The notes below the pieces were generated by a model, which searched no databases, had not been told where the DNA came from, and saw only the letters and a program-made list of their open reading frames with translations. The position numbers and the translations under genes are program-made. A DNA stretch of 64,000 bases from Mobula hypostoma (lineage: Eukaryota): NCBI RefSeq assembly GCF_963921235.1, contig NC_086101.1, positions 22,072,001 through 22,136,000 of the forward strand, read 5' to 3'. Positions 34,909-62,439 of the stretch are shown here, one piece after another. Position 1 is the first letter of the stretch. Each line of letters starts with the position of its first letter.

Positions 34909-34984
34909 ATGTCACCCAGACGAAGTGAGGGGGTCAGGGTGTATGGCGTCCAGCTATTAACTTTTACTCTACTGGTCCCGATGG
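34909..34984 (+). CDS. Ig-superfamily receptor exon 1: signal peptide MSPRRSEGVRVYGVQLLTFTLLVPM
   Basis: ATG at 34909, basic N-region plus hydrophobic core, consensus donor G|GTAAGT in phase 1 that joins the IgV exon as GCC (Ala). Confidence 0.8.
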
Positions 34985-35359
34985 GTAAGTGTTTCTTAAC
35001 TAACTCGTGTAATGTCTATCTTACAATCATAATTGCCAAAGAGTAGGAAAAATATCTCGGATGATTACCTTGGCGAAAATATGTCCAGCGGAGCTACCAT
35101 TTTGGAAAATATATTTACACCGCTGTAAATTGCGGTTCTGCTCAAAGTGAGCACCTGGTTTGATTATTTTTGCGTGATTATCGGGTGGATAATCGCAGGG
35201 CCAGACTGCCCCCGGTTTCACTGGGATGCCCCTGCTCCTCCTTGGCAACCTCCCTACACTGTTCATCGATCAGTGTAAAACTACAAGAAGAAGGCATAGA
35301 ATTGCCGGCGGAATGCTACAAAGAACGCGATTAACACTACAATCTTAGTGATACTGACT

Positions 35360-35758
35360 GCCTATTTCTCACCGCTGGCATTTGGGGCAGCAGAGTAGGT
35401 CCACCATCTCTGGCGGTGTTCAGGGATTCTTCGTGTCACAGCTCGGCTTTCACGACTACTGTTAGACATGCAAGTCCCACCCGGGGACTCAGGAATACCA
35501 TCGCACTCAGATGTTGAAGCTTCCGTAACAATTTTGTTTGACCAGTTTGGGTTGTTCGCCCTGAGCTGAACCCCCGAACCTGGAGGACTGGTAGGCCACT
35601 CTTCGTCTGGCCTCGGTCCATTGACCTGTTTGGCATGGGCGACCCTACCAAGAGACAAACCACAAAGCCCCTGACTCCAGCCAACAAAGCTCTCCCGGTC
35701 ATTGAGGCATACAGGCCTCCAAACCACGACAGGGCTGTGGTCCTTTTGGAGGAATCAT
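35360..35758 (-). mobile_element. RTE-clade internal-deletion derivative (5' and 3' ends joined)
   Basis: 5' cctgtcgtggtttggaggcctgtatgcctcaatgacc resembles an RTE/BovB 5'UTR. 3' ccagagatggtggacctactctgctgccccaaatgccagcgg resembles an RTE 3' end. Confidence 0.6.
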
Positions 35759-35939
35759 AGTATTAATAGTAACAGTTATCAGTGATGTTAGGAAATAATT
35801 CAGATTCTGACCCGGCGAATATAAAGTTCCCGCATTAAATCCCTGGGGACCAAGAATATCGCCGTGTTGTATTCATTTGAAATTCTCGACCACAGAAGAC
35901 AACTGAAGACAAGTAATTAAAGTATTTAAGGAGTTAGGT

Positions 35940-36110
35940 ATATTAAGATATCAAATGAGAATGGCCAGACTGTTTCTTCAAGCTCACAAGAAGGCGACAG
36001 TAACTCAAATAACCACTCGTTACAACAGTGATGTGCGGAAGAGCATCTCTGAACGCACAGCCTGTCGAACCTTGAAGTGGGTGGGCTACAGCAACAAAAG
36101 GTCACGAACA
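35940..36110 (+). mobile_element. Tc1 transposase fragment
   Basis: RMARLFLQAHKKATVTQITTRYN...SISERTACRTLKWVGYS. Confidence 0.8.
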
Positions 36111-36111
36111 C

Positions 36112-36578
36112 GGAGGAACTCGGATGTTCCCGGGGACGCACACGGAGACCAACAACCGGTGCTACTGGCAGATCATCAACTCGGTGAAAGACGCTCTTTG
36201 GTCGGCCTGAAACTTGATGATCTACCAGCACATGGAGATGTCCGTGGCAGAATGCTGCCGACTGGCACATTCTCGGCTTCAGGAGTCCGTGCTGAGGGAC
36301 GCACTGAAACTCGGTGCAGCCACCGCAAGGGCCCGGTGGGGAAGGACCACTGTTTAGGGTTCTTCTCCCGCTGGAGTGGGAGGGGTCGGGTGGCGGGGAG
36401 TATACTGTATCCCTCAACAATGGTGTGGGAAGGTGAAACAACAGAGCGCCACGTGGGTGGCCAAAAATATGGATATGTAGAGACCATAATGGAAACATAT
36501 GTAAAGGATTGAGTCATTGAATGGTTTATTGTATGTAATTTTATTTTTGAATAAAGTATATTTTGAAATAATAAAAAA
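36112..36578 (+). mobile_element. Tx1/L1-like LINE 3' end (younger)
   Basis: GMFPGTHTETNNRCYWQIINSVKDALWSA*NLMIYQ...CCRLAHSRLQESVLRDALKLGAATARARWGRTTV*, then AATAAA and an A-rich tail. Homologous to 29180-29420. Confidence 0.8.
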
Positions 36579-37166
36579 GAACTCAGCAGGCCAGGCAGCA
36601 TCTATGCGAAAGAGTACAGTCGACGTTTCGGGGCGAGACGTTCTCTTTTGTTAGGTTTGTTGAGAATGTTTGGATTCGGACTGCAGCTGGTAGAATATAT
36701 TAACTGTGGTTATCCTTTAAAGCGTTGAGGAGTTTGTTCTGATGGACAGAAAACACTTTTAGGGACCTTTGTTCCCTCCAGTCTGCTGAAGCGTCTCAGC
36801 ATCCATAGACGCTGCCTGACCTGCTGAGTTCCTCCAGCATTTGTGCGTGTTGCTTAGATTTCCAGCATCTGCAGATGTTCTCCTGTTTGTCACTTTGTAG
36901 GTACTTTCTTCTGGCAAAGAGATCATGGTCCTGGGAAGGGAGCAGTAACACAGTATTGACATTCGCCATGATCGTATTAAATGGCGGAGCCGGTTCGAAG
37001 GCCGAATGGCCCACTCCGCCTTTAATGTCCCTGTCTACGGGTGGCGGCGGAATGTCAAACACCGGAGAGCGTTTTCGTTTTGTAATTAGTGATACACTGT
37101 CGTTTAAGCAATGATTGGCTTTATCATTTAAATATCATTTCGTTTTGTATCACTCTCCACCTTTAG

Positions 37167-37559
37167 CCGTTGCAACACTGAGGGTACATCAGAACCGCTT
37201 GAACGGAAGCGTGGACCATTCTGTGCTCCTACCCGCCTCTTACACAATCTCGGACCCACGGGGTTATCTGCGGATCAAATGGAGCAGGGCTGGGAAAAGA
37301 ATTGTGGAATACAGATGCATATCAGAGCGAAACAGCAACTCAGATGAATGCAGCCACGTCATGTCTTACTCTGATCTCTATAAACACCGGGTTGTTCTTT
37401 TCCCGGAGAACGCTTCGCTGCTGCTGAAACATTTGCAGATTAACGACAGTGGCCTTTATGAATTATCTGTTAGCCAGGCAAGAGGAATCGAAAGAGGAAG
37501 CTTTAACTTAGTTGTCCAGGCTGACAACGCAAATGAAACCGGCCACGGGGAGATAATGG
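37167..37559 (+). CDS. Ig-superfamily receptor exon 2: single IgV domain of CD2/CEACAM/SLAM/HEPACAM type
   Basis: Acceptor ctctccacctttAG and donor G|GTAGGT, phase 1-1, 393 nt open. Motifs GSVDHSVLLPASY, IKWS, YKHRVVLFPENASLLLKHLQINDSGLYEL. Four N-glycosylation sequons (NGS, NAS, NDS, NET). Confidence 0.9.
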
Positions 37560-38684
37560 GTAGGTAACTTCCCAGTAGTTTTGTTCCGTGTGTTGAGAAT
37601 GTTTGGATTCGGACTGTAGGAGGGAAACGTATTAACTGTAGTTATCTTTTAAAGCGTTGATGAGTTTGATCTGGCGTACAGAAAACACTTGTAAGGACTT
37701 TTTTTCCCGTGCCTTGCTCTCTTCTCGCTGCTGCCAGCACGAGGGAGGTACAGGAGTCTTAGGTCCCACATTATCAGGTTCAGGAACAGTTATTACACGT
37801 CAACCATCAGGCTCCTGAACCAACGTGGGTAACTCCACTCACCTCAACATAGATCTGATCCACAACCTGTAGACACATTTTCAACGACTCTAGAACTTAC
37901 GTTCCCGGTATCTGTCTATATATTTATTTATTTCTTACACAAAGCATTTGGTTATTTATCTGTTCATTCAGTTACTGTATTTGCAGTTTGTTTTCTTTTG
38001 CACGCTGGTTGTTTGCCAGTCCTTGTGTGTAGTTTTATCTGTGATTCTGTAGTATTTCTTTATTCTAATGTGAATGCCTGCCAGAAAATGAATCTCAGGA
38101 TAGTATATGGTTACATACACGTACTTTGACAATAAACTTACCTTGAACTTTGAAATTGTATTTAAAATGAGGCACGACGAGCCCAGCGAGTTGTATTCAT
38201 GCAGGTTTTCAATGTAGTTAAACATCACAGGAATCTTGAAGGCTAATTTACAGAATTTGATGCCTAACCACAAAAGAAGATTGGAGCGTGTGTATAACAC
38301 TAAAGAGGTGGCACGTTTTAAAGATTATTTCAAAGATGTGGTTTCCAAAAATCCACCCTCTTCTCCACAGACTGCCTTCTCGTCATAGGTTAGAAAATGC
38401 CAAACATTCACCACTTTCAGACTGAAGACATTTCTTTAACCTCAGGCCTGAATGGCCTGCCCATTATTTGAGGCTCTGACCTTAAGCCAGTCTCCATACA
38501 TTTATGCTGCTTTGTCCAATCCTCATATTATATGTTTCAATGACATTCTACTGCACTAAGCTCAAGACAACTATGGCTTTGTCCATTAATGTTCTCCTCA
38601 TTCACAGATCCAGTGTCCCAAGAACCATTCAGCTGCATCTTGGCTGCTCTCCATCTAAACTGTTGTCATTTAAGTGAGGATATA

Positions 38685-41070
38685 GTCATAGTCATAGTCA
38701 TACTTTATTGATCCCGGGGGAAATGGGTTTTCATTACAGTTGCACCATAAATAATTAAATAGTAATAAAACCATAAATAGTTAAATAGTAATATGTAAAT
38801 TATGCCAGAAAATAAGTCCAGGACCAGCCTATTGGCTCAGGGTGTCTGACACTCCAGGGGAGGAGTTGTAAAGTTTGATGGCCACAGGCAGGAATGACTT
38901 CCTATGATGCTCAGTGCTGCATCTCGGTGGAATGAGTCTCTGGCTGAATGTACTCCTGTGCCCAACCAGTACATTATGTAGTGGATGGGAGACATTGTCC
39001 AAGATGGCATGCAACTTAGAAAGCATCCTCTTTTCAGACACCACCATGAGAGAGTCCAGTTCCATCCCCACAACATCACTGGCCTTACGAATGAGTTTGT
39101 TGATTCTGTTGGTGTCTGCTACCCTCAGCCTGCTGCAAACATGATAGCACTGGCCACCACAGACTCGTAGAACATCCTCAACATCGTCCGGCAGATGTTA
39201 AAGGACCTCAGTCTCCTCAGGAAATAGAGACGGCTCTGACCCTTCTTGTAGACAGCCTCAGTGTTCTTTGACCAGTCCAGTTTATTGTCAATTCGTATCC
39301 CCAGGTATTTGTAATCCTCCACCATATCCACACTGACCCCCTGGATGGAAACAGGGGTCACCGGTACCTTAGTTCTCCTCAGGTCTACCACCAGCTCCTT
39401 AGTCTTTTTCACATTAAGCTGCAGATAATTCTGCTCATACCATGTGACAAAGTTTCCTACCGTAGCCCTGTACTCAGCCTCATCTCCCTTGCTGATCCAT
39501 CCAACTATGGCAGAGTCATCAGAAAACTTCTGAAGATGACAAGACTCTGTGCAGTAGTTGAAGTCCGAGGTGTAAATGGTGATGAGAAAGGGAGACAAGA
39601 CAATCCCCTGTGGAGCCCCAGTGCTGCTGATCATTCTGTTGGACACACAGTGTTGCAAGCACACGTACTGTGGTCTGCCAGTCAGGTAATCAAGAATCCA
39701 TGACACCAGGGGTGCAACCACCTGCATCGCTGTCAGCTTCTCCCCCAGCAGAGCAGGGCGGATGGTGTTGAATGCACTGGAGAAGTCAAAAAACATGACC
39801 CTCATGGTGCTCGCTGGCTTGTCCAGGAGGGTGTAGACACGGTTCAGCAGGTAGACGATGGCATCCTCAACTCCTAGTCGGGGCTGGTAGGCGAACTGGA
39901 GGGGATCTAAGTGTGGCCTGACCATAGGCCGGAGCAGCTCCAGGACAAGTCTCTCCAGGGTCTTCATGACGTGGGAGGTCAATGCCACTGGTCTGTAGTC
40001 ATTGAGGCCGCTGGGGCGCGGCGTCTTCAGCACAGGGACGAGGCAGGATGTCTTCCACAGTACAGGAACCCTCCGGAGCCTCAGGTTCAGGTTGAATACA
40101 TGGCAAAGTACTCCACATAGCTGAGGGGCACAGGCTTTGAGCACCCTGGTACTGACACCATCTGGTCCTGCAGCCTTGCTTGAGTTGAGACGTTTCAGCT
40201 GTCCTCTCACCTGTTCAGCTGTGAAGCCCACCGTGGTGGTTTCGTGTGGGGGAGGGATATGGTCATGAGAGCAGGGTGGGGGACTGTGAGGAGGGGTAGG
40301 AGGGGAGAGAGGAATATGTGTTGGTTGGGGGCCAACAACAGATGGCTCATGTGGGGGATGGGCAGGGCCACAATGTCAAATCTGTTAAAGAACAGGTTAA
40401 GCTCATTGGCCCTGTCCACACTGCCTTCCGCTCCTCTGTTGCTAGTTTGCTGGAATCCAGTGATGGCCCTCATCCCCCTCCAGACCTCTTTCATGTTGTT
40501 CTGCTGGAGTTTCCACTCAAGCTTCCTCCTGTACCTGTCTTTAGCCTCCCTGATCCTGGCTTTCAGGTCCCTCTGTATTGCCCTCAGCTCCTCCCTATTT
40601 CCGTCTCTATCTTCCATCTTCCATCTCTACCCAATTTACCCAATTTCCCTCGGGATCAATAAAGTATATCTATCTATCTAAACACCCTCTTTTTAGATTC
40701 AGGATGTCCTTAATGTCCTTTGTTACCCATGGCTTGTTATTTGAATAACAAAGGACAGTTCTTGTCGGAACATTGCAGTCTACACAGAAGTTGATGTAAT
40801 CAGTGATGCACTCTGAGAGCCCATCAATATCCTCTCCATGTGGCTTACAGAGTGCCTGCCAGTCTGTCACATCAAAACAACCCTGGACCGCCTCATAAGC
40901 CTCCTCCGACCATTTCCTCACTGTCCTTGAGGTTGCAGGTTTACTCTTCACCAGAGGCACGTAGCAGGGTTTGAGATGCACCAGGTTGTGATCTGACCTT
41001 CCCAGTAGGGGGAGGGGAGAGGAGCTGTATGCATCCTTAACATTAGCGTACATCAAATCCATATCAAGAT
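38685..41070 (-). mobile_element. Young Rex1/Babar LINE copy C (longest; APE end through RT to tail)
   Basis: ORFs 40670-41062 (GRSDHNLVHL), 40207-40617, 39125-40231 (RT) and 38829-39071. (TATGAC)n tail. Lies antisense in intron 2 of the Ig gene. Confidence 0.95.
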
Positions 41071-41324
41071 TGCACCTAGCACACCAGGCATGGACTCAGA
41101 CTTTCTCATTTTGTACTCAAATCTTCTTACAATAAAGGCCAACATACACGTGGCATAAACCCATTCAGTAGGTCAGACCACATCTGTGGAAAGAGGAAAT
41201 GAGTTAATAGCTCAGGCTGAAGACCTTCCAATTTTTTTTTTATTTTGTATTTTCAGCATATATAGTGTTGAAATTTCAAGTCACTTACCTTCCTTTGCCT
41301 ACTGCAACCATATGTTATTTCTGA

Positions 41325-41495
41325 GTTTGCGTGGAACGTCACAGTGAGCATTATGCTATAACAATACCAGTGACCCAGGTTCAATTCCCGCCCCTGTCCG
41401 TAAGGAGTTTGTACGTTCTCCCCGTGACCGTGTGGGTTTCCTCCGGGTGCCTCGGTTTCCTCCCACGTTCCGATCATGTATGGATTGGTCACGTG
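41325..41495 (+). mobile_element. HE1-like V-SINE
   Basis: B box ggttcaattcc and V domain ggagtttgtacgttctccccgtgaccgtgtgggtttcctccgggtgc. Related copies near 42240-42380 (-), 47270-47430 (-) and 60640-60790 (+). Confidence 0.75.
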
Positions 41496-43697
41496 GGTGT
41501 GATTTTGCACCTTGGTTGTTTGTCCATCTTTGCTATTTCTATTGTGTTTCTTTGTATTTATTGTGAATGCCCATAAGAAAATGAATTTCAGGGTAGTATA
41601 TGTACTTCGATAATAAAGTGTCCTTTGAACTTTAACTGGGTGACCGGGGACTCGTTGGACCAGAAGGGACTGTAACTGTGCCTCATCTCTAAATTAATAC
41701 ATGTTATAAGGACAACCAGCTCCCTCTGACTATTAAGACATTCAATCTCATACCATTTGAAAATACTCCTCCTTCCTCTTTTTCTCCCTTGTATTTCTGC
41801 ACATTATATTCAACTTGCCGTGTCATTACCCAGTCACAAATTTTAACTGTGCCATCATAAAACACGTTTGGATTCTCCTCACAGACCATACTGCCACTTT
41901 GTAGCACCAGGTTTAAGCAGCATCCGCAGAGACAAAAAGAGTAAGTTTCGGGACAACACCCTTCATCAGGACTGAGAGGGAAAAGGAAAGATTGTTGTTA
42001 TAACTGTCAGAAAGGGATGGGAGAAAGGCTGGGCAGTGATGGGTGGAATCAGATGCAGATAGAATGGGGGTGGGAGTGGATAGGAGTGATGAACAATAAT
42101 CTTGGCAAACAGGGAGCGGACATTAGGAAATGACCCATTATGATTTATCATCTGGATTCTGCATCTTCCGTCTATTTTCTTTCTTCATTTAGCTTGGTAA
42201 CAGGCCTGCACTGCCTAATACACATGCAACCTATTAACCTACTAACCTGTACATCTTTGGAATGTGGGAGGAAACCAGAGCACCTGGTGGAAACCTACAT
42301 GGGTCACAGGAAGAACGTACAGACTTCTTACAGACATCAGCAGGAACTGAACCTGAGTTACTGGCACACAAGTAGCATTGCACTAACTGCTATGTTATCA
42401 TGCACCCTGAAGTGTTTTGGCTCTGTACTTCGTATCACCAGCTGTCTCATATATATTATACAAGATTCCCTTATCAAAATTTCACCATATCCAGTAAGTA
42501 GCTGGGATCCCACTCTCCAACTTCCTCTCCCTACACTGGTCAAAATCTCCGAACCTGAATCTTGTCAAGTTAAATCTAGTCAGATTCCTAATCTTTACTT
42601 TTCATGCGTTAAACAATCTTCAATCCAAGTCAGTATGTTACTCGCAATAGTGTGCACTCTAATTATCAACAACCTCTTCTGTGGTGCCTCATCAAAGACT
42701 TTCTGAGGGTTCAGTTAGACCACAATTAGTTTGCCCTTATCTATTCTGATAGTAACAATGTCAGAAAATCACAAAAGATTAGTAAGGAATCATTTCTTTT
42801 TCGTAGTGGCATCAAGGTAACCCTAACCCTATCCCACCTGAGTGAGAGGATCAGAAAGCGAGTGATATTGTTTTCTTTTTCTCAGACACACCCTAAAAGT
42901 CAAAAAGTCTTTTAAGTGTTCCTTTCAACGTGCACACAGAGAGAATCAGTTTAAAAATAAACCTACAGTAACCCAAAGAATTAATTTTCGACTTGTACTT
43001 ATATGGAAGCAGTTAATGCAAGTATGGCCACTTTATATAAAACTATTGAGTTATATATTTATAAAATGTTTATTTTTATATTTATATGTAGAATCTAAAT
43101 CTAAGTGGGAAATTAGCAGAAGTTCCAATTTCCCCCATGCTGGAGATCCCCTCCTTTCTAAATAGTCATCGTCATAGTCATACTTTATTGATCCAGGGGG
43201 AAATTGGTTAAATGAATGTACTGGCTTGACAATTGTCAAGTTTGAAGTACCTGAATATCTCCTCATTGCTGCCATCAGGAAGAAGGTACAGGAGCCTCAA
43301 GACTCACACCACCAGGTTCAGGAACAGTTATTACCCCTCAACCATCAGGCTCTTCAACGAAAGAGGATAACTTGATTTATCCCATCACTGAAATATTCCT
43401 ACAACCAATGAACTCACTTTCAAGGACTGTCCATCTCATGTCCTTGGCATTTATTGCTTATTTATTTATTATTATTGTTTCTCCTTTTTGCATTTGCACA
43501 GTCTGTTCTCTTCTGCACCCTGGTTGAACACCCTAGCTGAGTGGTCTTTCATTGATTCCATTGTGTTATTATTCTAGAGATTTGTTGAGTATATCCACAA
43601 AAAAATTAATCTCAGGGTTGTTTATGGTGACATATATGTACTTTGATAATAAAATTTACCTTGAACTTTGAACTTCCAATCCTGACTTGTTCTACAG

Positions 43698-43799
43698 ATA
43701 CAGCCAAGAAGATAACTCCAGGATTCAAAGACAAAATTCGATATGTTACTCTTACTCTTATTTTGTTTTTCTTGTGTTTTACCATGAAGATACGGAGAG
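43698..43799 (+). CDS. Ig-superfamily receptor exon 3: stalk plus transmembrane (DTAKKITPGFKDKIRYVTLTLILFFLCFTMKIRR)
   Basis: Acceptor cttgttctacAG and donor G|GTGAGC, phase 1-1. Hydrophobic run followed by the basic stop-transfer KIRR. Confidence 0.8.
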
Positions 43800-44829
43800 G
43801 TGAGCAATTATGATATGGCACAGCCTACCTATACTTGAGCATGATATTTGTGTGTTTTTTACAACTTTCAATTATTTTATTAATACACAAAACTAATAAA
43901 ATGCTGTGCTGTTATACGGATTACATATTGTACCTCTATCAATCTGAGATCAGTTTAGCCACATAAAAACAACATTATAAACACAAGAGAATTGACAGAC
44001 ACTGGAAATCCACAGCAACACTCAAAATGTTGGAGGAACTCAGCAGGCCAGGCAGTGTCTGTGGAGCAGAATAAACAGTCGATGTTTGGGTCAGAAGGCT
44101 TCAGCAGGAAAAATTGCCAAGTACAGTCATGGTCAAAGATACCAAACGACACGGCTACCACATGGTCGGCTAATTAGATACAATATTTGAAATAATGAGC
44201 AAGCGTACAGGTGTACCTAATAAAGTGGCCACTGAGTGAAAGTATGTAGGTCAGTTTCTACACCATACATGGCTTTATCACATCATCCTATTTCTCCATG
44301 GCACGATGATGATGATGATGATGATGATGATGATATGTGTAGTTAGTAACATTTTAACTTTTCTCTGCATGGCAATCTTATGGGTTGAGTTGAGTGCCTG
44401 TTATACGTGGCGCCCAAATTAGGATGGGTGTAGAAACCACTGTTGCTCATGAACCTATTAATTCCTCAACATTAACATTTTACAAAAGTAATAAAATAAC
44501 AAATACTAATAAATGTAATAACTAAATATTAGTGCCGTGAAGTTCCTATAAAAGTTAAAATGATAGAATATTCTGCAATCCTATTTGTTAAATGAATCTA
44601 TGATAGAGCATTTCTCTTCCAGTTAAAAATTAATTAAGTACAGTACATAATGTTTGCATGACAGAAACTCCTTGTAATCCTGACAGAAGAGAAAATTAGT
44701 TGAGATGTTACTGTGCAACTTTAAATGTTTAATATATAATTATTTTGGCTGGAGTGTACCAATTCAAGGTTCTGACCAGCAACTGCTCATTGCCAAAGGG
44801 GGACTAATATGAGTTTTTTTTCTTCTTAG

Positions 44830-44885
44830 ATTCTAAACGAGCTCAAAAACGATCAAAAAGAGGAAATGCTTCTCAGAATGGTCAG
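44830..44885 (+). CDS. Ig-superfamily receptor exon 4: juxtamembrane tail (DSKRAQKRSKRGNASQNGQ)
   Basis: Acceptor ttttttttcttcttAG and donor CAG|GTAAGC, phase 1 to 0, open and basic. Confidence 0.8.
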
Positions 44886-45133
44886 GTAAGCACAACCATG
44901 AGGAACGTTGAGATTATCTTATCCATGTAGATATTTGATTCTTGAATTGCTGCTCCTCCACAGTCTGCAAAGATATGGGCTCTCTAATATGTATTTAGAG
45001 AACACTTTGGCTCATCTGGTGCTGGCTATTGGCAAGAGATGTTGTATTAGTGACGGTGGAAGGGTGGAGAAACAGGATGGCGTGGTAAAGCTGTGCATCA
45101 GCATTCTACATATAGTGAGTGACCTACATGCAT

Positions 45134-45665
45134 ACACTTAGTGGTCACTTTATTGGTACACCCGTACACTTGCTTCTTAATGCAAATATCCAATTATCCA
45201 ATCACATAGCAGCAACTCAATGCATAAAAGTATGCAGACATGCTCAAGAGGTTCAGTTGTTGCTCGGAATGGGGAAGAAATGTGACTATATGACTTAGTG
45301 GAATGATAATTGGTGCCGGGCGGAGTATCTCAGAAACTGCTGATCTCCCGTGATCTTCATGCACAACAGTCTCCAGAGTTTACAGAGAACGATGCGACAA
45401 AGGAAAACGTCCAGTGAGTGGCAGGTTCTGTGAGTGAAAATACCTTGTTAATGAGAGAGGTCCAAGGAGAACGGCCAGGCTGGTTCAAGCTGACAGGAAA
45501 ATGGCAGTAACTCAAGGACAGCGCATTACAGCAGTGGTGTGCAGAAGAGTCTCTCTGAATGCACGATACATCAAACCTTGAAGAGGATGGGCTACAGCAC
45601 AGAAGACCAGGAATGTACACTCTGTGGCCACTTCATTAGGTAGAGGAGGTAGCTGACCAAGAGGC
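45134..45665 (+). mobile_element. Tc1-like non-autonomous element
   Basis: TIR cacttagtggtcactttattggtacac; same family as 19095-19642. A right-end remnant of another copy lies at 44150-44238. Confidence 0.8.
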
Positions 45666-48539: not shown

Positions 48540-49240
48540 TAGATTAGATTAGATTATGAGGACACTCAGTCCTCGTTTATTGTCATTTAGAAATGCATGC
48601 ATTAAGAAATGATTCAATGTTCCTCCAGAGTGATATCACAAAAAAAAGGACAAACCAAAGACTAACACTGACAAGACCACATAATTATAACTTATAGTTA
48701 CAGCAGTGCAAAGCAATACCATAATTTGATAAAGAGCAGACCATGGGCACGGTAAAAAAAAAGTCTCAAAGTTCCAATCGACTCCCGATAGTCCCGATAG
48801 CAGGTGGCAAAAGGGAGAAACTCTCCCTGCCATAAACCTCCAGGCGCCGACAACTGTCAACGCATTGGAAGCACCCGACCACAGCTGACTCTGAGTCTGT
48901 CCGAAAACTTCGAACCTCTGACCAGCCCCTCTGATACAGCCTCCCGAGCACCATGCTCTGCTGAGCGCTTTGACCCCCTCACCCCCCCCTGCCCCCGGCT
49001 GCTGAACAACAAGCAAAGCCGAGGACTCGGGGCCTTCTCCTCCGGAGATTCTGGATCACACAGTAGCAGCGGCAGTGAAGCAGGCATTTCAGAAGTTTCT
49101 CCAGATGTTCCTCTGTGCTCTCACATCTGTCTCCATCAAATCAGGATTTTGCACGGCACCCTACTTGACAGATAACAGGTATCATTCACCGGAGTGGCGC
49201 TGCGCACTGCGTCGCACCGCCATCTTCTCCTCCTCCTCCT
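48540..49240 (-). mobile_element. Non-autonomous non-LTR element with (ATCTA)n tail, inserted in a CR1 tail
   Basis: 5' ggagaagatggcggtgcgacgcag; 3' tail ctaatctaatctaatct; no coding remnant recognised. Confidence 0.55.
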
Positions 49241-49509
49241 TACTTGTTTGAGTTTGAGCTCTCAGTTGGGTCTCTCTCCGTTGCAAAGGAAGTACATAAG
49301 TTTTAAGATGTTGTATCCTACACTCAGAAAGAGTGCAGAAACATGACTTCCAAAGTGCCAAGTTGTGTTCCCACAGATTATGTGCAACTTCCAAGACTGC
49401 TGCATAGCAATACTAAAAGACAATCAGTCCTTAAAGACACACTTGGCTTGGCAGCCGGACAGCAGTAATGATGGAGTTAGAGGCTATAGGGGTCAAGAGA
49501 GAGATGTCA

Positions 49510-50130
49510 GCTGACACGGGACAGGGGTCAGGGATCAAAGGACTGGGGACAGAGAACCAGGACTGGGAATGGGAGACAGGGGACTGGGAATGGGGGACAG
49601 GGAATTAGTGACAGGAAACAGGGACAGGGAACAGGAGACTGGTGACAGGGAAGAGGGAACAGGGGACAGGGGGCAGGGGAGAGGGAACAAGGACAGGAAA
49701 CGGGACGGGGACAGGAGACAGGGGAAAGGAGACAGAGGACAGGGGAAAGGGGACAGGGAAAGGAAACAGGGACAGGAGACAGGAGACAGGGACAGGGAAC
49801 AGGGAACAGGGGTCGGAGACAGGGGACAGGGGAAAGGGGACAGGGAAAGGGAACAGGGACAGGGGACAGGAGACAGGGACAGGGGACAGGGGACAGGGAA
49901 TAGTGGACAGGGGAAAGAGGACAGGGGCCTGGTGATAGGGAACAGGGGACAGGCGACAGGGAGGGACAGGGGACAGGAGCAGAAGGGAGAGGACTGTGAT
50001 AGGGGATGGGGAACAAGAAACAGAGGACAGGTGTCAAGACAGAGAGGACAGGTTACAGGAAATACAGAATAGGGAACGAAAGGCAGAAAACAGAGAACAG
50101 GGAACATGGGATGGGGGATAAGGGAGAGCT
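49510..50130 (+). repeat. Purine-rich GGGACA(G)-type minisatellite
   Basis: Dozens of degenerate ggggacagg/gggaacagg units. Source of the spurious ORFs 49528-50107. Confidence 0.95.
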
Positions 50131-51350
50131 CCCAGATCTATTGACAGTTAAGCGCCAAAGTCTTTGAACTGAAGCATTAACTCTCATGCTCTTTCCACAG
50201 ATGTTATCAGACCAGCTCAGTACTTCAATCATTTTCTATATTTTCATTTTAAATTTGCAGCATCTGCATTTTTGGTTTTCCCATCTCTGTGATCAGGGCT
50301 GGCCAGGCAGGTGAATGTTGGAGGCTGAGGTGATGGAAGTATGATCTGGTACTTTAGTTGCTCAGTTGTCGACCCTTGCCCCTAAAAAAAAAATCAGCTG
50401 GTGTGCAGGCTCAGGCACTGATGTCCCCGTTTTACAGGACAGCAGTTTACCTCCTGCCACTTTTAGACAACTCAAAATTAGAATCAGAACAGGTTTAATA
50501 TCACTGGCACATGTCGTGAAATTTGTTGTATTTGTGGCAGCAGGACATTGTAATACATAATAATAGAGAGAGAGAGAGAAAAGGTGAATTACATTTATAT
50601 ATATATATTAGTTAAATTAAATAACTAGTGCAAAAATAGAAATACTAAGTAGTGAGGTAGTTCCACGGGTTCAATGTCCATTTAGAAATCAGATGGCAGA
50701 AGGGAAGAAGCTGTTCCTGAATAGTTGAATGTGTACCTTCAGGCTTCTGTACCTTCTTCCTGATGACAGCAACGAGAACAAGGCATGTCCTGGGTAGTAG
50801 AGGTGCTTCACAATGGACGCTACCTTTTTGAGGCATCGCTCCTTGAATATATCCTGGATACTATGGTGGCTAGTGCTCATGATGGAGCTCACGAAGTTGA
50901 CAACTCTCTGAAGCTTATTTCGATCCTGTGCAGTAGACCCCTCCCCTATAGTCAGTTGTTCACCACAGACAGACAGGCCTTGCCAGATTTTTCCCTCAAA
51001 GAGCTAGGGCCAGCATCTGGAAGCCAGACCATGTGTGGCAAGGATGTCATGGATTAATGACGTCAAGCAGACCCTAAACAACAATGACCAGATTTCCATC
51101 AGCCCAATTCTAATCATGGAGGAGACTCTGCAATTCTAGGCAATCAAAATCCAGCATGAAGGTCATCAAAAGGGCATTGAACTGAGATAGAGGATTTAAT
51201 TGGACAAATTAATGCCATATCTCTTCCCACTGGTCTTATTTGATTTTGTTTGCTTGTATGTGGTTGCAAAGCCACCAACAATTTTCAAACATTCAGCAAA
51301 GAGAAAGAACTCATCATGAGTATTGGTAATTTCCCTGTGGGGAAAGAGAC

Positions 51351-51880
51351 ACACTCAGTGGCCATTTGATTAGGTGCAGGAGTGTGCCGAATAAAGCAGC
51401 CACTGAGTGTATATCTATTGCCTCCAGCTGTTGTAGCACATCACCTTTGAAGTTTGGTGCATTGTGTGTTCAGAGATACTGTTCTGCACACCGCTGTTGA
51501 AACTTGTGGTTAGGTGCCTTCCTGTTAGCTTGAACTAGTCTGGACATTCTTCTCTGACCACTGTCATTAACAAGGCATTTCCACCCACAGAACTGTTGCT
51601 CACTGGATGATTTTTGATTTTTGCACCATTCTCTGCATGATACTTCCAGGGGAATCTGGAATACTCAAACCACCGTATCTGGCACCAATAATCATTCCAC
51701 GGTTAAAGTCACTGAGATCACATTTCTTCCCCATTCTGATGTTTGGTCTGAACAACAACCGAATCTCTTGACCATATCTGAATGCTTTTATGCATTGAGT
51801 TGCTGCCATACAATTGGCAGATTAGATGTTTGCACTAACGAGCAGGTGTACGCAAATACTTAATAAAGTGGCCACTTCTC
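51351..51880 (-). mobile_element. Tc1-like non-autonomous element
   Basis: MGKKCDLSDFNRGMIIGARYGGLSI; end repeats cactcagtggcc and taataaagtggccac. Confidence 0.8.
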
Positions 51881-52394
51881 TAAATCTTTAGCGTAGAGAA
51901 ATAGCTCTTACTGGTATGGAGGCTACTGACATTGCTGTGTACCTTTCGATGTCTCTTGAAGCAAGGCTGATAGGTTAAAGTGCTCAGGAAATGCGTTAAT
52001 TTTTAAAAAGCAATGCTCTTCAAAGAGAACTTTACAGCTAAATCAATATGGTTTTGTGGAAAGGAAATTGTGCTTGACCAATGTATTGGGCTTCTTTGAA
52101 ATAACATATGGTGTAATTAAGGGAATTGTGAAATGTGGTATACTTAGATTTTCCACAGAGCATTATATAAATATCTGTATTAAAGGTTATGGTGCAAAAT
52201 ACAGCGATAGTGCACGAGGTAACAGACTGGGCTGGATAAAAGACTGGCTATCTAACAGAAAATAGAAAGTGGGCACAAGATTTTCTTACTGGCAAGGTGT
52301 AATCCTATTAAATGTCAAAAAGGTTGCATGGACATCTCCTACTCTAATGCATATCACCGTCTGTTCCAACTGAGAGGACATGAGAAGAATATCG

Positions 52395-52860
52395 TGGGTG
52401 AGAGACAGAGAAAGGTTAAGATAGAAAGAGAGTAAGAAAGGCAGATAATGAAGAGATGAGGAGTGCACTCAGCTGCTCGGCTGTTCTGGTAACAAGGCAG
52501 GGGGAGTGAGGTATGGTCCTCCTGGGAGGTTCACAATTCTAATTCGAGAGTTTGGATGGTGAGTGAGTAAGAAAGTGACAGAGAGGCAAAGGGAGAGATA
52601 AGGCGTTAGATCAAGGGAGAGAGAGATGTAAAGGGAGAGCAAAATAGATAGAGTGATAGAGAGGGAGAAATATAAAGATAGGCAGTAAGAGAGAAAAAGA
52701 AACAGCGAGAGAGGGAGGGAGGTGTACAGAGAAAAAGAGAGATAGAGGGAGAATGAGATAGGTTCATAGAGGTAGAGATATATAGATAGATATAATAGAG
52801 TAGAGAGAGAGAGAAAGTGAAAGAAGTTCCAATGGATAGTAAGTGGGAAGAGAAACAGAG
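52395..52860 (+). repeat. GA-rich low-complexity tract
   Basis: Long degenerate (GA/GATA/GGGA)n purine stretch. Confidence 0.85.
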
Positions 52861-52879
52861 ACTTGCAGATCAATGCGGA

Positions 52880-53450
52880 ATTTGCCGCGGTAGATATGGG
52901 TTCAGATATGATATCTGACAGATCTGGGGTGGGTAGATTCAGACCTTTTAGGTTCCTGTTTTTGAATGGATTCTGCAGTTTGAAGAAGCACAGCTCAAGG
53001 ATTCCTGGAGTTGCTGAAGATGTTATACTTTATCAAGGAAGGACTTTTCTTTGTGTTCCTGGAAACCCGCGCCAGAGCCTGGAATAATTTTCCAATTTCA
53101 GAAGTCAGGGTCCAGGTATGACATGCTCACCAGTGGTAATTCAGCATGATCAGAACATCAGTGCTGAGGATATTGGCCTGGGAGTAGGTGCTGATGTTAG
53201 CTCACCTATCCTGCCTGTTTGTTTGGTGAACTTTGCAGGGGTAATACTTGTCGAGTGGTTTCAGTTTGCCCATGCCTCTGAAGAGTAAAGGAGAATGGAA
53301 TCACTGTTGCTTGGTTGCTCTGCGCTGAGCTTGATGCCACAGAAAGCTGGCAGGTCCCGGTGCCCTAGATGCATCTGTTCATTACCAAAATCAAATCGTA
53401 TTGATTGACTTATTTGTGAATATAGTGTCCAGATCATCTCCCTGGTGCAA
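52880..53450 (-). mobile_element. Old RTE-clade LINE fragment
   Basis: SILLYSSEAW resembles RTE LLYGSETW. ANISTYSQANILSTDVLIML resembles the RTE C-terminal NxSVLSQANIPSIEAL region. Confidence 0.55.
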
Positions 53451-56409
53451 CGATGAGCAGCAAATTGGAAGACCTCAGGGATACAGATACCATGAATGTT
53501 AGCAGGCTTTTTCCTGTCAGGTTGCGTGAGACTCAATCTAGAGGTCATAGGTTTAGGGTGACAGGTGAAATAGTTAATGGGAATCTGAAGGAGAACTTTA
53601 CACAGAGGGTCGTGCAAGTGTGCAACAAGCTGCAAGCTAGTTGGGAGGTCAATAGTTACATTTAAGAGAAGTTTGGATAGGTACGTGAATGGAACAGATT
53701 TGGAGGGCTATGGTTCAGGTTCAGGTAGTTGGGATGAGGCAGAAGACCAGGCTAGCACGTATTAGATGGGCTGAAAGGCCTGTTTGTGCTGTAGTACTCT
53801 ACAACTCTAGGCCATGATAGTTATCGCTAAAGATGATATAACAGAGATGCTCACAGCCAATATGACCTTGATTCCCACAGCGGGCACAGCCAGAGATCTC
53901 CCACAGAATATTGGCTATGATGGCAGCCCTGAAGAACAAATGCATGGTTCATCAGTAAGGTGTCATTGGGAAGTGGTAGCTCTGAGCTGTCTGTGGGAGT
54001 CAATATTCTACAACCTGTCCTGTGCACATCCCGGAAACTAATTAATGACTGGAGGAGCAGGGAGAGAAATGGAAGAAATAAAGAAATTCAGGACAATTTT
54101 CTGATCAGGTGCATCGCTCTTCGTAAACTGGCTGTAATTCCATCAGTTACAAATGTTAAAAGAGAACAAATAAATATTCATGATATTGCTCTCATTGTGT
54201 ACAATATAACTAACTATTGGTACCAAATGAGCAATACTGGTATAGGTATTGGTTTATTATTGTTACGTATACAGAGATACAGTGAAAAATTTTGCCTTAC
54301 CAACAGTCATGCAGATCACGTACATTGAGGTAGGACAAGGCAAAACAATAACAATACAAAATAGACTGGAAAGGCTAAATTAGCTGCCATTTTAATAGCT
54401 CAGTGCTCTTTGTGAAAAGTGGGAAATTGTTGTCCATCCATACTTTATTGTTTTATTGGCAAAAAGAGCCAATTTTCTCATTGTATTGAATGGTGCTGAA
54501 CACAAACGTTATCTTGTTCCATCATTGGAAAGGCACAAAGATTTTAGTCCAAGAGATGCACGGAGATCTGAGTGTCCTGGTGCATGATCTGCAAATGGCT
54601 AACATGCAGTGCATCAAGTCAATGGGAAGCTGGAGGAACTGAATACAAAATAAGGAAATGTGTTTCACATGTATTAGGCATTACTGAAATTGAAAATGCC
54701 ATATTTGTACTGGTTTACTGAGTTGGCTGGTGTATGGGGGATGGTTAGAAAAGCCAGGCTTGTAACCTCTGAGATTTAGAACCTGGTGACTTGAATGAAA
54801 CAAATCTAATCTTAACAACAAGGATGAAATGCTGGAGGAACTCAACAGGTCAGGCAACGTCTATGGAAAAAAGTACAGACGACGCTTGGGCTGAGACACT
54901 TCGGCAGGACGATCTTGATGGGTCTTGGTAGGATGGAGTCATTAGTGTCACAAAGCTCTCCAGCACTAAAGGGGGGAGGATGTTTCTCCTTGTGGAAGAA
55001 CCTAGAATTTGGGATCACTTCAAAATCAAGGGAAATTTGCTTAAGTGAAAAATGAGACAAAGGTTTTCCAATCAGGGGATAATGAGTCTTTCCACCTCTC
55101 TTCCTTAAAGTGCCATTGATTCAGAGTCTTTGAATATATTTATGGTGCTAGAGACTTTGGTGAAAGGCTATCATGAGTAGATGGAATTGCAGAGCTAAGA
55201 TTATAAAGTCAAGTTAATTAGCATAATAAAAATAAGTAACATAGAAATCTTGAGGGGCCAAATGGCCTATGCCTGATCCTAATTTACGTATTCATATGTT
55301 TCTACAACAAGTGCAACAGAATCTTCCGGAATATTCCACTTGCAATGGCAAAACATTCCAAGAATGATATGGAGGTGAAATCAAACAAAATAGATGCCAC
55401 ATCAAATTACCAAAATCTTGGTCAATATAGTATATTTAAGAAGGGTCTTCAAATAGAAACAAACTTAGAACTTCAGAAAAAGTTTAGAGAGGGAATTCCA
55501 AAATTCCATAAATTTTAGAATTGCCCTTTTGGATTGGAGGATTGCAAATGTGACCAGACTATTTTAGAAAAGAAGAGAGAAAACAGAGAATTACCAAGCT
55601 TTTAGCTGAAGTTTAGTTGGAGAGAAAATGCTGAAGCCCATAACAAGCTAAACACAGAAAATGTTGCAGGAACTCAGCAGGTCAGGCAGCATCAATGGAA
55701 GTGAAGGATTCGTCATGAGGACTTCAGGACATTGGAAGCTTTGATTCTAATGAAGCATCTCAGCCTAAAACATCAACTGTTCATTTCTGTCTATAGATGC
55801 TGCCTGACCTGCTGAGTTCCTCCAGCATCTTGTGTGTGTTGCTCAGGATTTTCAGCATCTGTAGAATCTCTTACATCATTAACATCTATATTGAGGTTCA
55901 TTGAGCAACACGTTTTGTTTTGCTCGATATCATGTTTTGACTAATCTACTGAATTATGAAGGGTGTGACTAATAGAATAAACAATGGGGAATCAATATTT
56001 GGATCTTTGGAGGGTTTTTGTTAAGGACCCACATATTTGCTAAAGACTTTGGTGACATACCAGGCTCTTTTTGACTACTAAGGCAATCGAGGGATGTGGG
56101 GGTAGTGCTGGAAAATAGAACTGAGGTTAAAAGTCTTGGGGAATCATGGAGCAGACGGGAATGGCTAGAGAGCTAAACATTGGCTTTTATTCCTAGTGTC
56201 CTTGTGTCCTAATGAGTTACAGAGCTCAACGTTAGTAGCTAAAGCTTTGCCCACCAGTGAATTTCTGGAAATGCAAAATAAAATCAGAAATTCTATTGAT
56301 GATAATTCACCTCCCCACAAACAAAAATATTCCATGCATCAAATTCTATTTTTACTAGATTACTCTAACAAAATTTGTGATCTGTTCCTTTTTCTTTATT
56401 TAACATAAG

Positions 56410-56499
56410 AATCCAACAACAAGCAACCCCATGGTAATTTATTCTGACATGAACTCATCAGAATATGCAGGAATTACGGGAAAAGCGGATAAGTGGTGA
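56410..56499 (+). CDS. Ig-superfamily receptor terminal coding exon with two tyrosine motifs (NPTTSNPMVIYSDMNSSEYAGITGKADKW*)
   Basis: Acceptor ttcctttttctttatttaacatAAG in phase 0, matching exon 4. VIYSDM and SEYAGI resemble ITIM/ITSM. The five exons total 717 nt, i.e. 238 aa plus stop. Extra phase-0 exons in between cannot be excluded. Confidence 0.65.
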   Translation, partial: NPTTSNPMVIYSDMNSSEYAGITGKADKW

Positions 56500-62310: not shown

Positions 62311-62439
62311 AAGTTACATTTTTATGTAAGTTTTATCATCTTTCATTTTTCATTGGCTGAGTGTTAAATATGCTACACCTGTGTGCCATCCAATAGGCCC
62401 TTGTTTATCTCAGAAATTTGCCTTAACTCGGTATGAAAG

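What the first reader, a model, noticed from the sequence alone, without database searches (positions are those of the whole stretch)
34909..56499. Hidden single-IgV receptor with a CD2/CEACAM-type V domain and paired ITIM/ITSM-like motifs
Seen: five exons with canonical splice sites and consistent phases (1,1,1,0) assemble into 238 aa with signal, V domain, TM and a tail ending VIYSDM...SEYAGI. Only exon 2 appears in the ORF track. Known: V domains without the B-F disulfide mark the CD2/SLAM/CEACAM N-domain group, and (S/I/V/L)xYxx(I/L/V) motifs recruit SHP-1/2. Inference: a compact inhibitory immune or adhesion receptor, possibly a chondrichthyan lineage-specific family. I cannot assign an ortholog.
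Basis: partly seen in the sequence, partly recalled or inferred. Interest (0 to 1): 0.75.

Follow-up and report, generated by a model that had tools for sequence, protein, structure and literature searches.

The report
Annotated devil-ray single-V receptor gene

Summary
Observation confirmed. The five exons (34909-34984, 37167-37559, 43698-43799, 44830-44885, 56410-56499, + strand) have GT/AG borders and phases 1,1,1,0. They give 238 aa, identical to RefSeq XP_062903529.1, "uncharacterized protein LOC134346154 isoform X2" of Mobula hypostoma. The gene is therefore not hidden, only unnamed.

Orthologs with the same five exons occur in sawfish and sharks. dN/dS against sawfish is 0.39. RNA-like runs hold exon 2 and exon 5 with its 3' UTR in exon-only proportions. 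No junction reads were obtained.

The V domain lacks the B-F cysteines, as do all 86 aligned relatives. Most of them have a C'-C'' cysteine pair instead. The nearest named folds and sequences are VSTM5, HEPACAM, CAR and the CEACAM N domain. No membership was established.

The inhibitory reading is weak:
- VIYSDM is a YxxM site, and its tyrosine is lost in three lineages.
- SEYAGI exists only in stingrays and mobulids.
- There is no ITSM.
- Batoids lost the ancestral terminal motif through a frameshifting deletion.

By contrast, an Arg near the outer end of the membrane span is invariant in the orthologs examined. Paralogs with uncharged spans carry long ITIM tails. This is the pattern of a paired-receptor family, and this gene sits on the charged, short-tail side. 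The scan has already flagged similar Arg-span family members about 5 Mb away.

The parts
34909..34984 (+). Exon 1 coding part: start codon and first 25 residues of the leader (MSPRR...), donor GT, phase 1
   Evidence: Identical to RefSeq isoform X2. MSPRR start shared with ray and Stegostoma orthologs.
37167..37559 (+). Exon 2: end of leader plus the whole V-set domain and start of the stalk (393 nt, phase 1-1). No B/F cysteines; Cys pair in the C'-C'' hairpin; three of the four ectodomain N-glycosylation sequons.
   Evidence: Pfam V-set 30 bits against a cut-off of 26, Receptor_2B4 23.2 against 21. AF2 with 86-row alignment, pLDDT 86.8. Column counts. Small RNA-like runs hold 0.58-0.69 of the words, against 0.74 expected for exon only.
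43698..43799 (+). Exon 3: stalk end and membrane span DKIRYVTLTLILFFLCFTMKI (102 nt, phase 1-1)
   Evidence: tblastn to shark orthologs down to E=2e-11. 86% identity to ray and 58% to shark orthologs over the span.
43739..43741 (+). Codon CGA for Arg171, about the fourth residue of the membrane span. Invariant in the shark and ray orthologs examined.
   Evidence: Aligns with the 'ILPP' start of the uncharged span of type B paralogs. Basic-span relatives have short tails that mostly lack ITIMs.
44830..44885 (+). Exon 4: basic juxtamembrane tail segment (56 nt, phase 1-0)
   Evidence: The same 56-nt exon occurs in Pristis.
56410..56499 (+). Exon 5 coding part: last 29 residues and stop TGA. The 3' UTR runs on to at least about 56800.
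   Evidence: tblastn to Heterodontus, E=9e-4. RNA-like runs hold 0.52-0.63 of 56200-56800, against 0.63 expected if the RNA starts at 56410; source DNA runs hold 1.00.
56434..56451 (+). VIYSDM (aa 218-223): YxxM site, homologous to the 'AVLY(S/T)(D/E)x' block of relatives. Not a canonical ITIM.
   Evidence: The Tyr is replaced by Phe or Arg in four ortholog lineages, and the +3 residue varies (M/V/I/T/R).
56458..56475 (+). SEYAGI (aa 226-231): fits the ITIM pattern but is a lineage-specific gain (Ser in sawfish and all sharks)
62224..62325 (+). Alternative exon used in place of exon 5 by RefSeq isoform X1 (248 aa). It is a copy of an interspersed repeat.
   Evidence: Eight copies of its first 40 nt lie in the window on both strands.

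Best explanation
This is LOC134346154 of the lesser devil ray. It is an intact, transcribed five-exon gene for a 238-aa type I membrane glycoprotein. The protein has one V-set domain that lacks the canonical disulfide, a short stalk, a membrane span with a conserved Arg near its outer end, and a 50-residue tail.

It belongs to a multigene family of sharks and rays, with more distant relatives in gar, amphibians, turtles and birds. That family has the layout of paired immune receptors. One class has an uncharged span and long tails with ITIMs. The other has an Arg-bearing span and short tails, mostly without motifs. This gene belongs to the second class.

The most likely mechanism (inferred, not shown) has three steps:
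1. The V domain binds a cell-surface or microbial ligand.
2. Arg171 pairs in the membrane with the acidic residue of an ITAM adaptor dimer (FcR-gamma, CD3-zeta or DAP12 type).
3. The adaptor delivers an activating signal.

The tail is a decaying remnant of an ancestral inhibitory tail. In Mobula it may add a YxxM site (PI3K p85-type) and a recently gained ITIM-like site, but neither is conserved. The confidence figure refers to this mechanism. That the gene is real and of this family is close to certain.
For: Gene reality:
- Exact identity to RefSeq isoform X2.
- The same exon sizes and phases in Pristis and the same five exons in Stegostoma.
- dN/dS is 0.39 overall, 0.35 for the V domain and 0.40 for the span.
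- RNA-like runs of two species hold exon 2 and exon 5 with its UTR in exon-only proportions.

Arg-span class:
- K(I/V)RY...FLCFT is invariant in Arg across the shark and ray orthologs examined.
- Only 15 hydrophobic residues follow the Arg. The segment aligns without gaps to the 19-residue uncharged span of type B paralogs, which puts the Arg at about span position 4.

Paired pattern:
- Among about 100 span-bearing relatives, 40 have a basic residue in the span. Of these, 7 have an ITIM or ITSM, and the median tail is 34 aa.
- The other 60 are uncharged. Of these, 32 have an ITIM or ITSM, and the median tail is 76 aa. Fisher p = 3.5e-4.
- Type A and type B spans are interspersed on the V-domain tree.

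Tail decay:
- Shark orthologs have H or F where a paralog has VDYAQI.
- Batoids share a roughly 5-nt deletion and an early stop. The old coding sequence is still visible in the 3' UTR.
- Tail dN/dS is 0.56.

Adaptor availability: an earlier scan report states that an expressed FCER1G gene exists in this genome (not checked here).
Against: - No adaptor binding, surface expression or cell type was tested.
- The span borders come from hydropathy and alignment only, so the Arg could sit just outside the bilayer.
- This orthogroup keeps a 50-67 residue tail. In Mobula it has two tyrosines, one of them in a canonical ITIM pattern, which is unusual for a purely adaptor-coupled receptor.
- Akula et al. 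2014 (PMC4016189) found no FcR-gamma in sharks using the data then available.
- The survey of relatives rests on automatic gene predictions.
- Junction reads are missing.
Confidence: 0.45

Rival explanations
1. One reading: a compact inhibitory receptor. After ligand binding, Tyr220 and Tyr228 are phosphorylated and recruit SHP-1/2, which damps activation.
For: SEYAGI fits (S/I/V/L)xYxx(I/L/V) and is kept as SDYVGI in Hypanus and Hemitrygon. The Tyr220 block reads VLYSDI in Pristis, VIYSDV in one Hypanus gene and VLYSEI in Heterodontus, all canonical ITIM patterns. Paralogs of the family do carry ITIM tails.
Against: In Mobula the first site ends in Met. Tyr220 is lost in Hemitrygon, the orectolobiform sharks and Cetorhinus. 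Tyr228 is absent outside Myliobatiformes. There is no TxYxx(V/I) motif. The tyrosines are only 8 residues apart. The terminal ITIM-equivalent is degenerate in most sharks and deleted in batoids. A conserved Arg in the span is not expected in a pure inhibitory receptor.
Confidence: 0.2
2. A non-immune adhesion or co-receptor protein of the VSTM5/HEPACAM kind. The V domain mediates homophilic or heterophilic contact, the Arg is only a flanking charge, and the tail has no immunoreceptor signalling role.
For: The best Swiss-Prot fold matches are VSTM5 (TM 0.74, 24% identity), then HEPACAM and HEPACAM2. VSTM5 is also the nearest named cluster in the Atlas. NCBI names some relatives HEPACAM2-like. 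The single-copy orthogroup is stable across sharks and rays with moderate purifying selection.
Against: Sequence identity to those proteins is only about 24%. The family shows the coupled pattern of charged span with short tail versus uncharged span with ITIM tail that is typical of immune paired receptors. The tissue of expression is unknown.
Confidence: 0.25
3. A decaying gene on its way to becoming a pseudogene, whose tail motifs are chance.
For: Tail truncation in batoids. A frameshifted exon 4 in one Hypanus model. An isoform that ends in a repeat-derived exon.
Against: The reading frame is intact in the ortholog species examined, from sharks to rays. dN/dS is 0.39 over 235 codons. The gene is transcribed.
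Confidence: 0.05

Closest known systems
VSTM5 (V-set and transmembrane domain-containing protein 5)
   Same: About 200-240 aa in total, with one V-set domain, one membrane span and a short tail. Best Foldseek match among reviewed proteins (E=5.7e-10, TM 0.74) and nearest named Atlas cluster, which also often hits Receptor_2B4.
   Different: Only 24% identity. The VSTM5_C family model is not in the Pfam copy available, so the C-terminal half could not be tested. No Pfam match other than V-set and Receptor_2B4 was found in the full protein. VSTM5 is not known as part of a paired, multigene family (my knowledge).
CEACAM N domains (CEACAM1/3/5/6/8)
   Same: V domain without the B-F disulfide. Invariant Arg-Asp pair and a 'NASLLL..L...DSG.Y' block that gives the local PDB hits (CEACAM1 52 bits with the family profile). 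The leader/N exon split in phase 1 is also shared. NCBI names duck and frog relatives CEACAM5-like and CEACAM3-like. Both are paired activating/inhibitory families.
   Different: The profile match to CEACAM covers only strands C''-F. There is no IgC domain. Activating CEACAMs carry their own ITAM, not a charged span (PMC5112662 and its supplement). Relatives abound in ducks and chicken, which PMC13278318 reports to lack CEACAM genes. An earlier scan report places the ray CEACAM locus on another chromosome. Synteny with LIPE-BCL3 was not shown.
CD2/SLAM family (2B4, CD48, SLAMF5/6)
   Same: Disulfide-less V domain. Pfam Receptor_2B4 just above its cut-off (23.2 against 21). Weak profile hits to CD48, SLAMF5 and SLAMF6.
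   Different: No membrane-proximal C2 domain and no TxYxx(V/I) switch motif. These families are absent from the top fold matches.
Adaptor-coupled activating arms of paired Ig receptors (for example Fc-alpha-RI, NKp46, LILRA, PIR-A, OSCAR)
   Same: Arg in the outer third of the membrane span, a tail shorter than that of ITIM-bearing relatives with related ectodomains, and signs of descent from an inhibitory ancestor by tail truncation.
   Different: A different ectodomain type (a single disulfide-less V instead of C2/I-set domains). A longer tail that still holds tyrosines. Adaptor pairing is untested.

Membership tests
Immunoglobulin V-set domain (Pfam PF07686) | Score above the curated cut-off and a V-type beta sandwich | tested here: met
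   30 bits against a cut-off of 26 for the exon 2 product. All 86 aligned relatives hit V-set. The AF2 model has pLDDT 86.8 and every top fold match is a V domain.
Disulfide-less V domains (CD2/SLAM/CEACAM/HEPACAM type) | No Cys at the B and F strand sites, with the core Trp and the Arg-Asp pair retained | tested here: met
   The sites are Ala and Leu. None of the 86 relatives has a Cys exactly at either site (1-2 rows have one in an adjacent column). The Arg, Asp and Gly are invariant, and the Trp and Tyr are present in 85 of 86 rows.
CD2/SLAM family | V domain followed by a C2 domain | tested here: not met
   Only 23 stalk residues lie between the V domain and the membrane span. There is no further Ig exon in the gene.
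CD2/SLAM family | TxYxx(V/I) switch motifs in the tail (SLAM receptors) | tested here: not met
   No such pattern occurs in the 50-residue tail.
CEACAM family | Location in the conserved CEACAM locus (between LIPE and BCL3 or their equivalents) | tested here: inconclusive
   The window holds no other recognisable gene, only LINE and Penelope-like fragments. Flanks in Pristis and Stegostoma show only another Ig gene. Indirect evidence is against membership: relatives exist in Galloanserae, which are said to lack CEACAMs, and the ray CEACAM locus is reported on another chromosome (unchecked).
CEACAM family | Tail with ITIM/ITSM, or with an ITAM split by phase-0 introns | tested here: not met
   There is no ITSM or ITAM. 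One lineage-specific ITIM pattern is present.
VSTM5 | VSTM5_C region after the V domain | not testable with these tools
   PF28389 is named by the Atlas but is not in the Pfam copy searched. No C-terminal family was hit.
HEPACAM family | V plus C2 ectodomain and a long cytoplasmic tail | tested here: not met
   Single V domain and a 50-residue tail. The fold match is to the V domain only.
ITIM-bearing inhibitory receptors | A canonical ITIM conserved among orthologs | tested here: not met
   Tyr220 is lost in four lineages and has a variable +3 residue. Tyr228 is confined to Myliobatiformes.
Adaptor-coupled activating receptors of paired families | Conserved basic residue inside the membrane span | tested here: met
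   Arg171 is invariant in the orthologs examined and aligns to span position 4 of the uncharged paralog spans. This rests on sequence and hydropathy only.
Adaptor-coupled activating receptors of paired families | Inhibitory counterparts with related ectodomains | tested here: met
   Type B paralogs have uncharged spans and VEYATV, VDYAQI or VEYDKI tails. The V tree mixes the two types. Fisher p = 3.5e-4.
Adaptor-coupled activating receptors of paired families | Physical association with an acidic-span ITAM adaptor | not testable with these tools

The most novel reading that the evidence does not exclude
The orthogroup is a long-lived intermediate between an inhibitory and an activating receptor. 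It acquired the adaptor-coupling Arg span before sharks and rays split, yet has kept a partly functional tail ever since. In Mobula, one small receptor would then combine adaptor ITAM signalling with its own YxxM and ITIM-like sites. It would belong to a so far undescribed, possibly MHC-linked, CEACAM/VSTM5-like paired-receptor family of non-mammalian vertebrates.
Probability: 0.2. Interest if true: 0.55.

Novelty: new member of a known kind. Interest (0 to 1): 0.35.

Why it matters
The gene model itself adds nothing to RefSeq. What the analysis adds is context. The gene belongs to an unnamed family of disulfide-less V receptors that spans sharks, rays, gar, amphibians, turtles and birds, and that shows the charged-span versus ITIM-tail split of paired immune receptors. 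I found no paper describing this family. It shows that automatic names such as "CEACAM5-like" or "HEPACAM2-like" hide a separate lineage. It also offers a clear case of an inhibitory tail eroding after a charged span was gained. This is relevant to how activating and inhibitory receptor pairs arose early in jawed vertebrates. It is still one of many such Ig receptor genes in this genome, and its function is inferred only.

Tried and rejected
- **Read laying:** That was the only call allowed, so none of the four junctions was seen in reads. The ORF over them was left out of the Pfam call and they were masked in the repeat count.
- **Sixth exon:** I looked for one like the shark C-terminal 20 residues. 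There is no credible match downstream in the window. The shark segment turned out to lie in the same last exon, and batoids lost it through a deletion.
- **Single-sequence AF2** gave a poor model (pLDDT 47.9) and was replaced by the alignment-based model.
- **Synteny:**
  - The M. birostris locus gave no DNA and no neighbours.
  - The Xenopus locus was withheld.
  - The Heptranchias protein was not on record.
  - The Pristis and Stegostoma flanks showed only a distantly related multi-Ig gene.
- **Other family genes in the window:** a search for close family V exons found none.
- **Full spliced protein as a direct query:** not typed in. It was reached through an alignment of exon references.
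- **Literature searches** for the family under CEACAM, HEPACAM, VSTM5, XMIV, LOC771657 and shark paired receptors gave no description.
- **No complex prediction was run,** because no adaptor sequence was in hand.


Full report
**1.

Reading the five stretches and joining them in a script gives exons of 76, 393, 102, 56 and 90 nt. Every internal border is AG...GT and the phases are 1,1,1,0. The open frame has 238 codons and ends in TGA at 56497-56499. Only exon 2 is long enough to appear among the mechanical ORFs (37115-37567).

The protein has these parts:
- a leader (MSPRR...PMAVA);
- one Ig domain;
- a 23-residue stalk;
- a hydrophobic span (IRYVTLTLILFFLCFTM);
- a 50-residue tail with Tyr220 (VIYSDM) and Tyr228 (SEYAGI).

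There are four N-glycosylation sequons in the ectodomain.

**2. The gene is real but not hidden**

A full HMMER scan with the exon 2 product found 245 relatives. A profile built from shark orthologs plus the window's exon translations then recovered a 238-aa Mobula birostris protein that is 99.2% identical. Its 90% cluster holds XP_062903529.1, [quoted passage not shown]. RefSeq therefore already predicts exactly this protein, but without a name.

A second RefSeq isoform (X1, 248 aa) replaces exon 5 with an exon at 62224-62325. The first 40 nt of that exon occur eight times in the window on both strands. It is therefore an exonised interspersed repeat and probably a minor product.

**3. Independent support for the exons**

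- The Pristis pectinata ortholog maps to exons of 76/393/96/56/87 nt with the same phases.
- The Stegostoma ortholog has the same five exons.
- Exons 3 and 5 of the window are found by tblastn with shark proteins (E down to 2e-11 and 9e-4).
- Nei-Gojobori dN/dS between the window and Pristis is 0.39 over 235 codons: V core 0.35, span 0.40 and tail 0.56. The gene is therefore under purifying selection, weakest in the tail.

**4. Transcription**

Indirect evidence comes from word shares.

| Stretch | Small runs X1-X3 (86-241 million letters, source species) | Expected if only exonic words are present | Source DNA runs |
|---|---|---|---|
| 37100-37620 (exon 2) | 0.69 / 0.58 / 0.58 | 0.74 | not listed |
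| 56200-56800 (exon 5 and UTR) | 0.63 / 0.56 / 0.52 | 0.63 if the RNA begins at the exon 5 acceptor and runs past 56800 | 1.00 |

Runs of a sister species behave alike: 0.44-0.33 against 0.67 for its DNA. This fits spliced mRNA carrying exon 2 and exon 5 with a 3' UTR. It is an inference from proportions and is not a demonstration of the junctions.

**5. The V domain**

Pfam gives V-set at 30 bits (cut-off 26) and Receptor_2B4 at 23.2 bits (cut-off 21). With an 86-row alignment, AlphaFold2 gives a confident V-type sandwich with pLDDT 86.8.

In that alignment:
- No row has a Cys exactly at the canonical B and F strand sites. Only 1-2 rows have one in an adjacent column. Here the sites are Ala and Leu.
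- The Arg, Asp and Gly of the V core are invariant, and the Trp and Tyr are present in 85 of 86 rows.
- 67 of 86 rows have two or more cysteines in the C'-C'' hairpin, which is a family feature.

The nearest matches by method are:

| Search | Best matches |
|---|---|
| Single sequence against PDB | Drosophila Otk (one Ig domain) ranks first, then weak hits to CEACAM8/6, CAR and CD2 |
| Family profile against PDB | pIgR ranks first by summed weak partial hits (62 bits); then JAML (57.6 bits) and CAR (full length); CEACAM1 (52 bits, strands C''-F only) |
| Foldseek against PDB | VCBP3, CAR, PD-L1, TIGIT |
| Foldseek against reviewed proteins | VSTM5 (TM 0.74, 24% identity), HEPACAM, TIGIT, HEPACAM2, CAR, A33 |
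| Atlas feature search | VSTM5 as the nearest named cluster |

None of this amounts to membership of a named family.

**6. What the relatives are called, and why that misleads**

Close relatives are all shark and ray proteins, mostly "uncharacterized". More distant ones are named CEACAM5-like (duck), CEACAM3-like (Xenopus), CEACAM4-like (Heptranchias), HEPACAM2(-like) (ostrich, stingray), CD276-like (gar) or A33-like.

Zimmermann and Kammerer define CEACAM genes by synteny (LIPE-BCL3), exon phasing and tail motifs (PMC5112662). They also report that ducks and chicken have no complete CEACAM gene (PMC13278318). Yet this family has many members in exactly those birds. An earlier report of this scan places the ray CEACAM genes on another chromosome (not checked by me).

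I therefore treat the family as CEACAM-like in its V domain but as a separate lineage. I found no paper on it.

**7. The tail motifs are not conserved**

Aligning the orthologs gives the following.

| Species or group | Block at Tyr220 | Site at Tyr228 |
|---|---|---|
| M. hypostoma (this window) | VIYSDM | SEYAGI |
| M. birostris | VFYSDM | SEYAGI |
| Hypanus (one gene) | VIYSDV | SDYVGI |
| Hemitrygon | VIFSDV | SDYVGI |
| Pristis | VLYSDI | SESAGI |
| Heterodontus | VLYSEI | Ser, no Tyr |
| Mustelus | VLYSDM | Ser, no Tyr |
| Heptranchias | SLYTEM | Ser, no Tyr |
| Scyliorhinus | VSYRGT | Ser, no Tyr |
| Cetorhinus | VLRSEM | Ser, no Tyr |
| Orectolobiform sharks | VTFSE(M/V) | Ser, no Tyr |

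- The Tyr220 position was lost at least three times, and its +3 residue is not fixed.
- In long-tailed paralogs the same block reads AVLYT(E/D)R, so it is not their ITIM.
- In Mobula the block ends in Met. That makes it a YxxM pattern (p85-type, from general knowledge) and places it outside the ITIM consensus.
- Tyr228 appears to be a gain of the stingray-mobulid lineage.
- No TxYxx(V/I) motif exists in the tail.
- The tyrosines are 8 residues apart. That is too close for the usual ITIM-ITSM pair and too short for an ITAM.
- Shark orthologs continue with about 20 more residues ending ...E(H/Y/F)xxIQI... This segment is homologous to the terminal VDYAQI ITIM of a Pristis paralog, but it has His or Phe in place of Tyr in all but Mustelus.
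- In Mobula and Pristis a roughly 5-nt deletion relative to Stegostoma shifts the frame and brings an early stop. The former coding sequence can still be aligned in the 3' UTR.

**8. The membrane span points the other way**

All orthologs have (D/A)K(I/V)RY followed by only 15 hydrophobic residues and then Lys. Family paralogs fall into two classes:

- **Type A** has this Arg-bearing span and short tails, usually without any tyrosine. Examples are Hemitrygon XP_072920459.1 and the two-V proteins with a ...LRYIGL... span.
- **Type B** has an uncharged span (for example VILPPVGLAV...) and tails of 66-113 residues. These carry YAEL..W plus VEYATV, VLYTEI plus VDYAQI, or VEYDKI.

The two span types align without gaps, which puts the Arg at about position 4 of the span.

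Over all relatives of up to 700 aa that have a span after the V domain:

| Span type | Number | With ITIM or ITSM | Median tail |
|---|---|---|---|
| Basic residue in span (36 Arg, 4 Lys) | 40 | 7 | 34 aa |
| Uncharged | 60 | 32 | 76 aa |

Fisher p = 3.5e-4. Most of the seven exceptions belong to this gene's own orthogroup. Arg-bearing spans with very short tails also occur in salamander, gar and other distant members.

On a V-domain tree the elasmobranch family is one clade (SH-aLRT 95). The ray orthologs are a tight group (99). Type A and type B genes are interspersed, as expected if V exons and span/tail modules have been re-paired.

This is the classic picture of a paired receptor family, and the window's gene is on the charged-span side.

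**9. Most likely mechanism**

Shown:
- the gene, its product and its domain type;
- conservation of the Arg;
- erosion of the tail;
- the family dichotomy.

Inferred:
- Arg171 lies in the bilayer and pairs with an acidic residue of an ITAM adaptor dimer, so that ligand binding by the V domain activates the cell.
- The Mobula tyrosines are at most accessory.

An earlier scan report says the devil ray has an expressed FCER1G gene. An older survey found none in sharks (PMC4016189). I tested neither claim.

**10. Surroundings**

The rest of the window shows LINE reverse-transcriptase fragments (15170-16483 and 39128-40231, both on the minus strand) and a weak GIY-YIG hit at 18404-19021, but no other recognisable gene. 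No second V exon of this family lies in the window.

In Pristis and Stegostoma the next gene downstream is a multi-Ig protein (V-set plus I-set/Ig_2/Ig_3). The V exon of the Pristis neighbour is only about 27% identical to this family.

Earlier scan notes place the following on the same chromosome:
- a three-V-exon gene 15.5 kb beyond the window's end;
- an NKp30-like gene 6 Mb upstream;
- Arg-span, Cys-less V receptors next to RPS18 about 4.9-5.0 Mb downstream.

This hints at MHC-type linkage. I did not test it.

**11. Verdict**

The finding is a correct hand-built gene model of an already predicted but unnamed gene. Its V-domain description is right. Its "hidden" label is wrong. Its inhibitory interpretation is the less likely reading. 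In kind it is a new, uncharacterised member of the well-known class of paired Ig-type immune receptors, in a family that has apparently not been described.

Noticed in passing
window 62224-62325 (+): RefSeq isoform X1 (XP_062903528.1, 248 aa) skips exon 5 and uses an exon that is a copy of an interspersed repeat. Eight copies of its first 40 nt lie in the window, for example at 55797, 57210 (-) and 44019 (-). It encodes a Cys-rich hydrophobic tail of doubtful function.
   Followed up: partly
window 15170-16483 (-) and 39128-40231 (-); 18404-19021 (-): Two LINE reverse-transcriptase ORFs (RVT_1 at about 85 bits, each followed by an ALKBH8_N-like piece), one of them inside intron 2. There is also a weak GIY-YIG (Penelope-like) ORF. 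No other host gene was recognised in the window.
   Followed up: partly
window 56500-56560 compared with L002:32060-32125 and L001:25745-25800: Batoids share a roughly 5-nt deletion in the last exon relative to Stegostoma, which causes an early stop. The former coding sequence for the shark '...ARIQI...' end is still alignable in the Mobula 3' UTR.
   Followed up: yes
Hypanus sabinus proteins P0164 and P0205: Hypanus has two gene models for this orthogroup. One (222 aa) has a tail that reads as a +1 frameshift of exon 4 and lacks both tyrosines. The other (289 aa) has an odd long N-terminus but an intact VIYSDV...SDYVGI tail. This could be a duplication, an assembly error or an annotation artefact.
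   Followed up: no
L001:33195-35753 (Pristis) and L002:34132-42125 (Stegostoma): In both species the next gene downstream, on the same strand, encodes a multi-Ig protein (V-set plus I-set/Ig_2/Ig_3; 522 and 436 aa). The V exon of the Pristis neighbour is only about 27% identical to this family. It may correspond to the three-V-exon gene that the scan reported 15.5 kb beyond this window.
   Followed up: partly
family relatives (P0002, P0006, P0180, P0069 and others): Bird, turtle, frog, salamander and gar relatives carry misleading automatic names (CEACAM5-like, CEACAM3-like, HEPACAM2, CD276-like). Many exist in ducks and chicken, which a 2026 preprint reports to lack CEACAM genes. This suggests an unnamed vertebrate family that may be missing from mammals.
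   Followed up: partly
   Followed up: no
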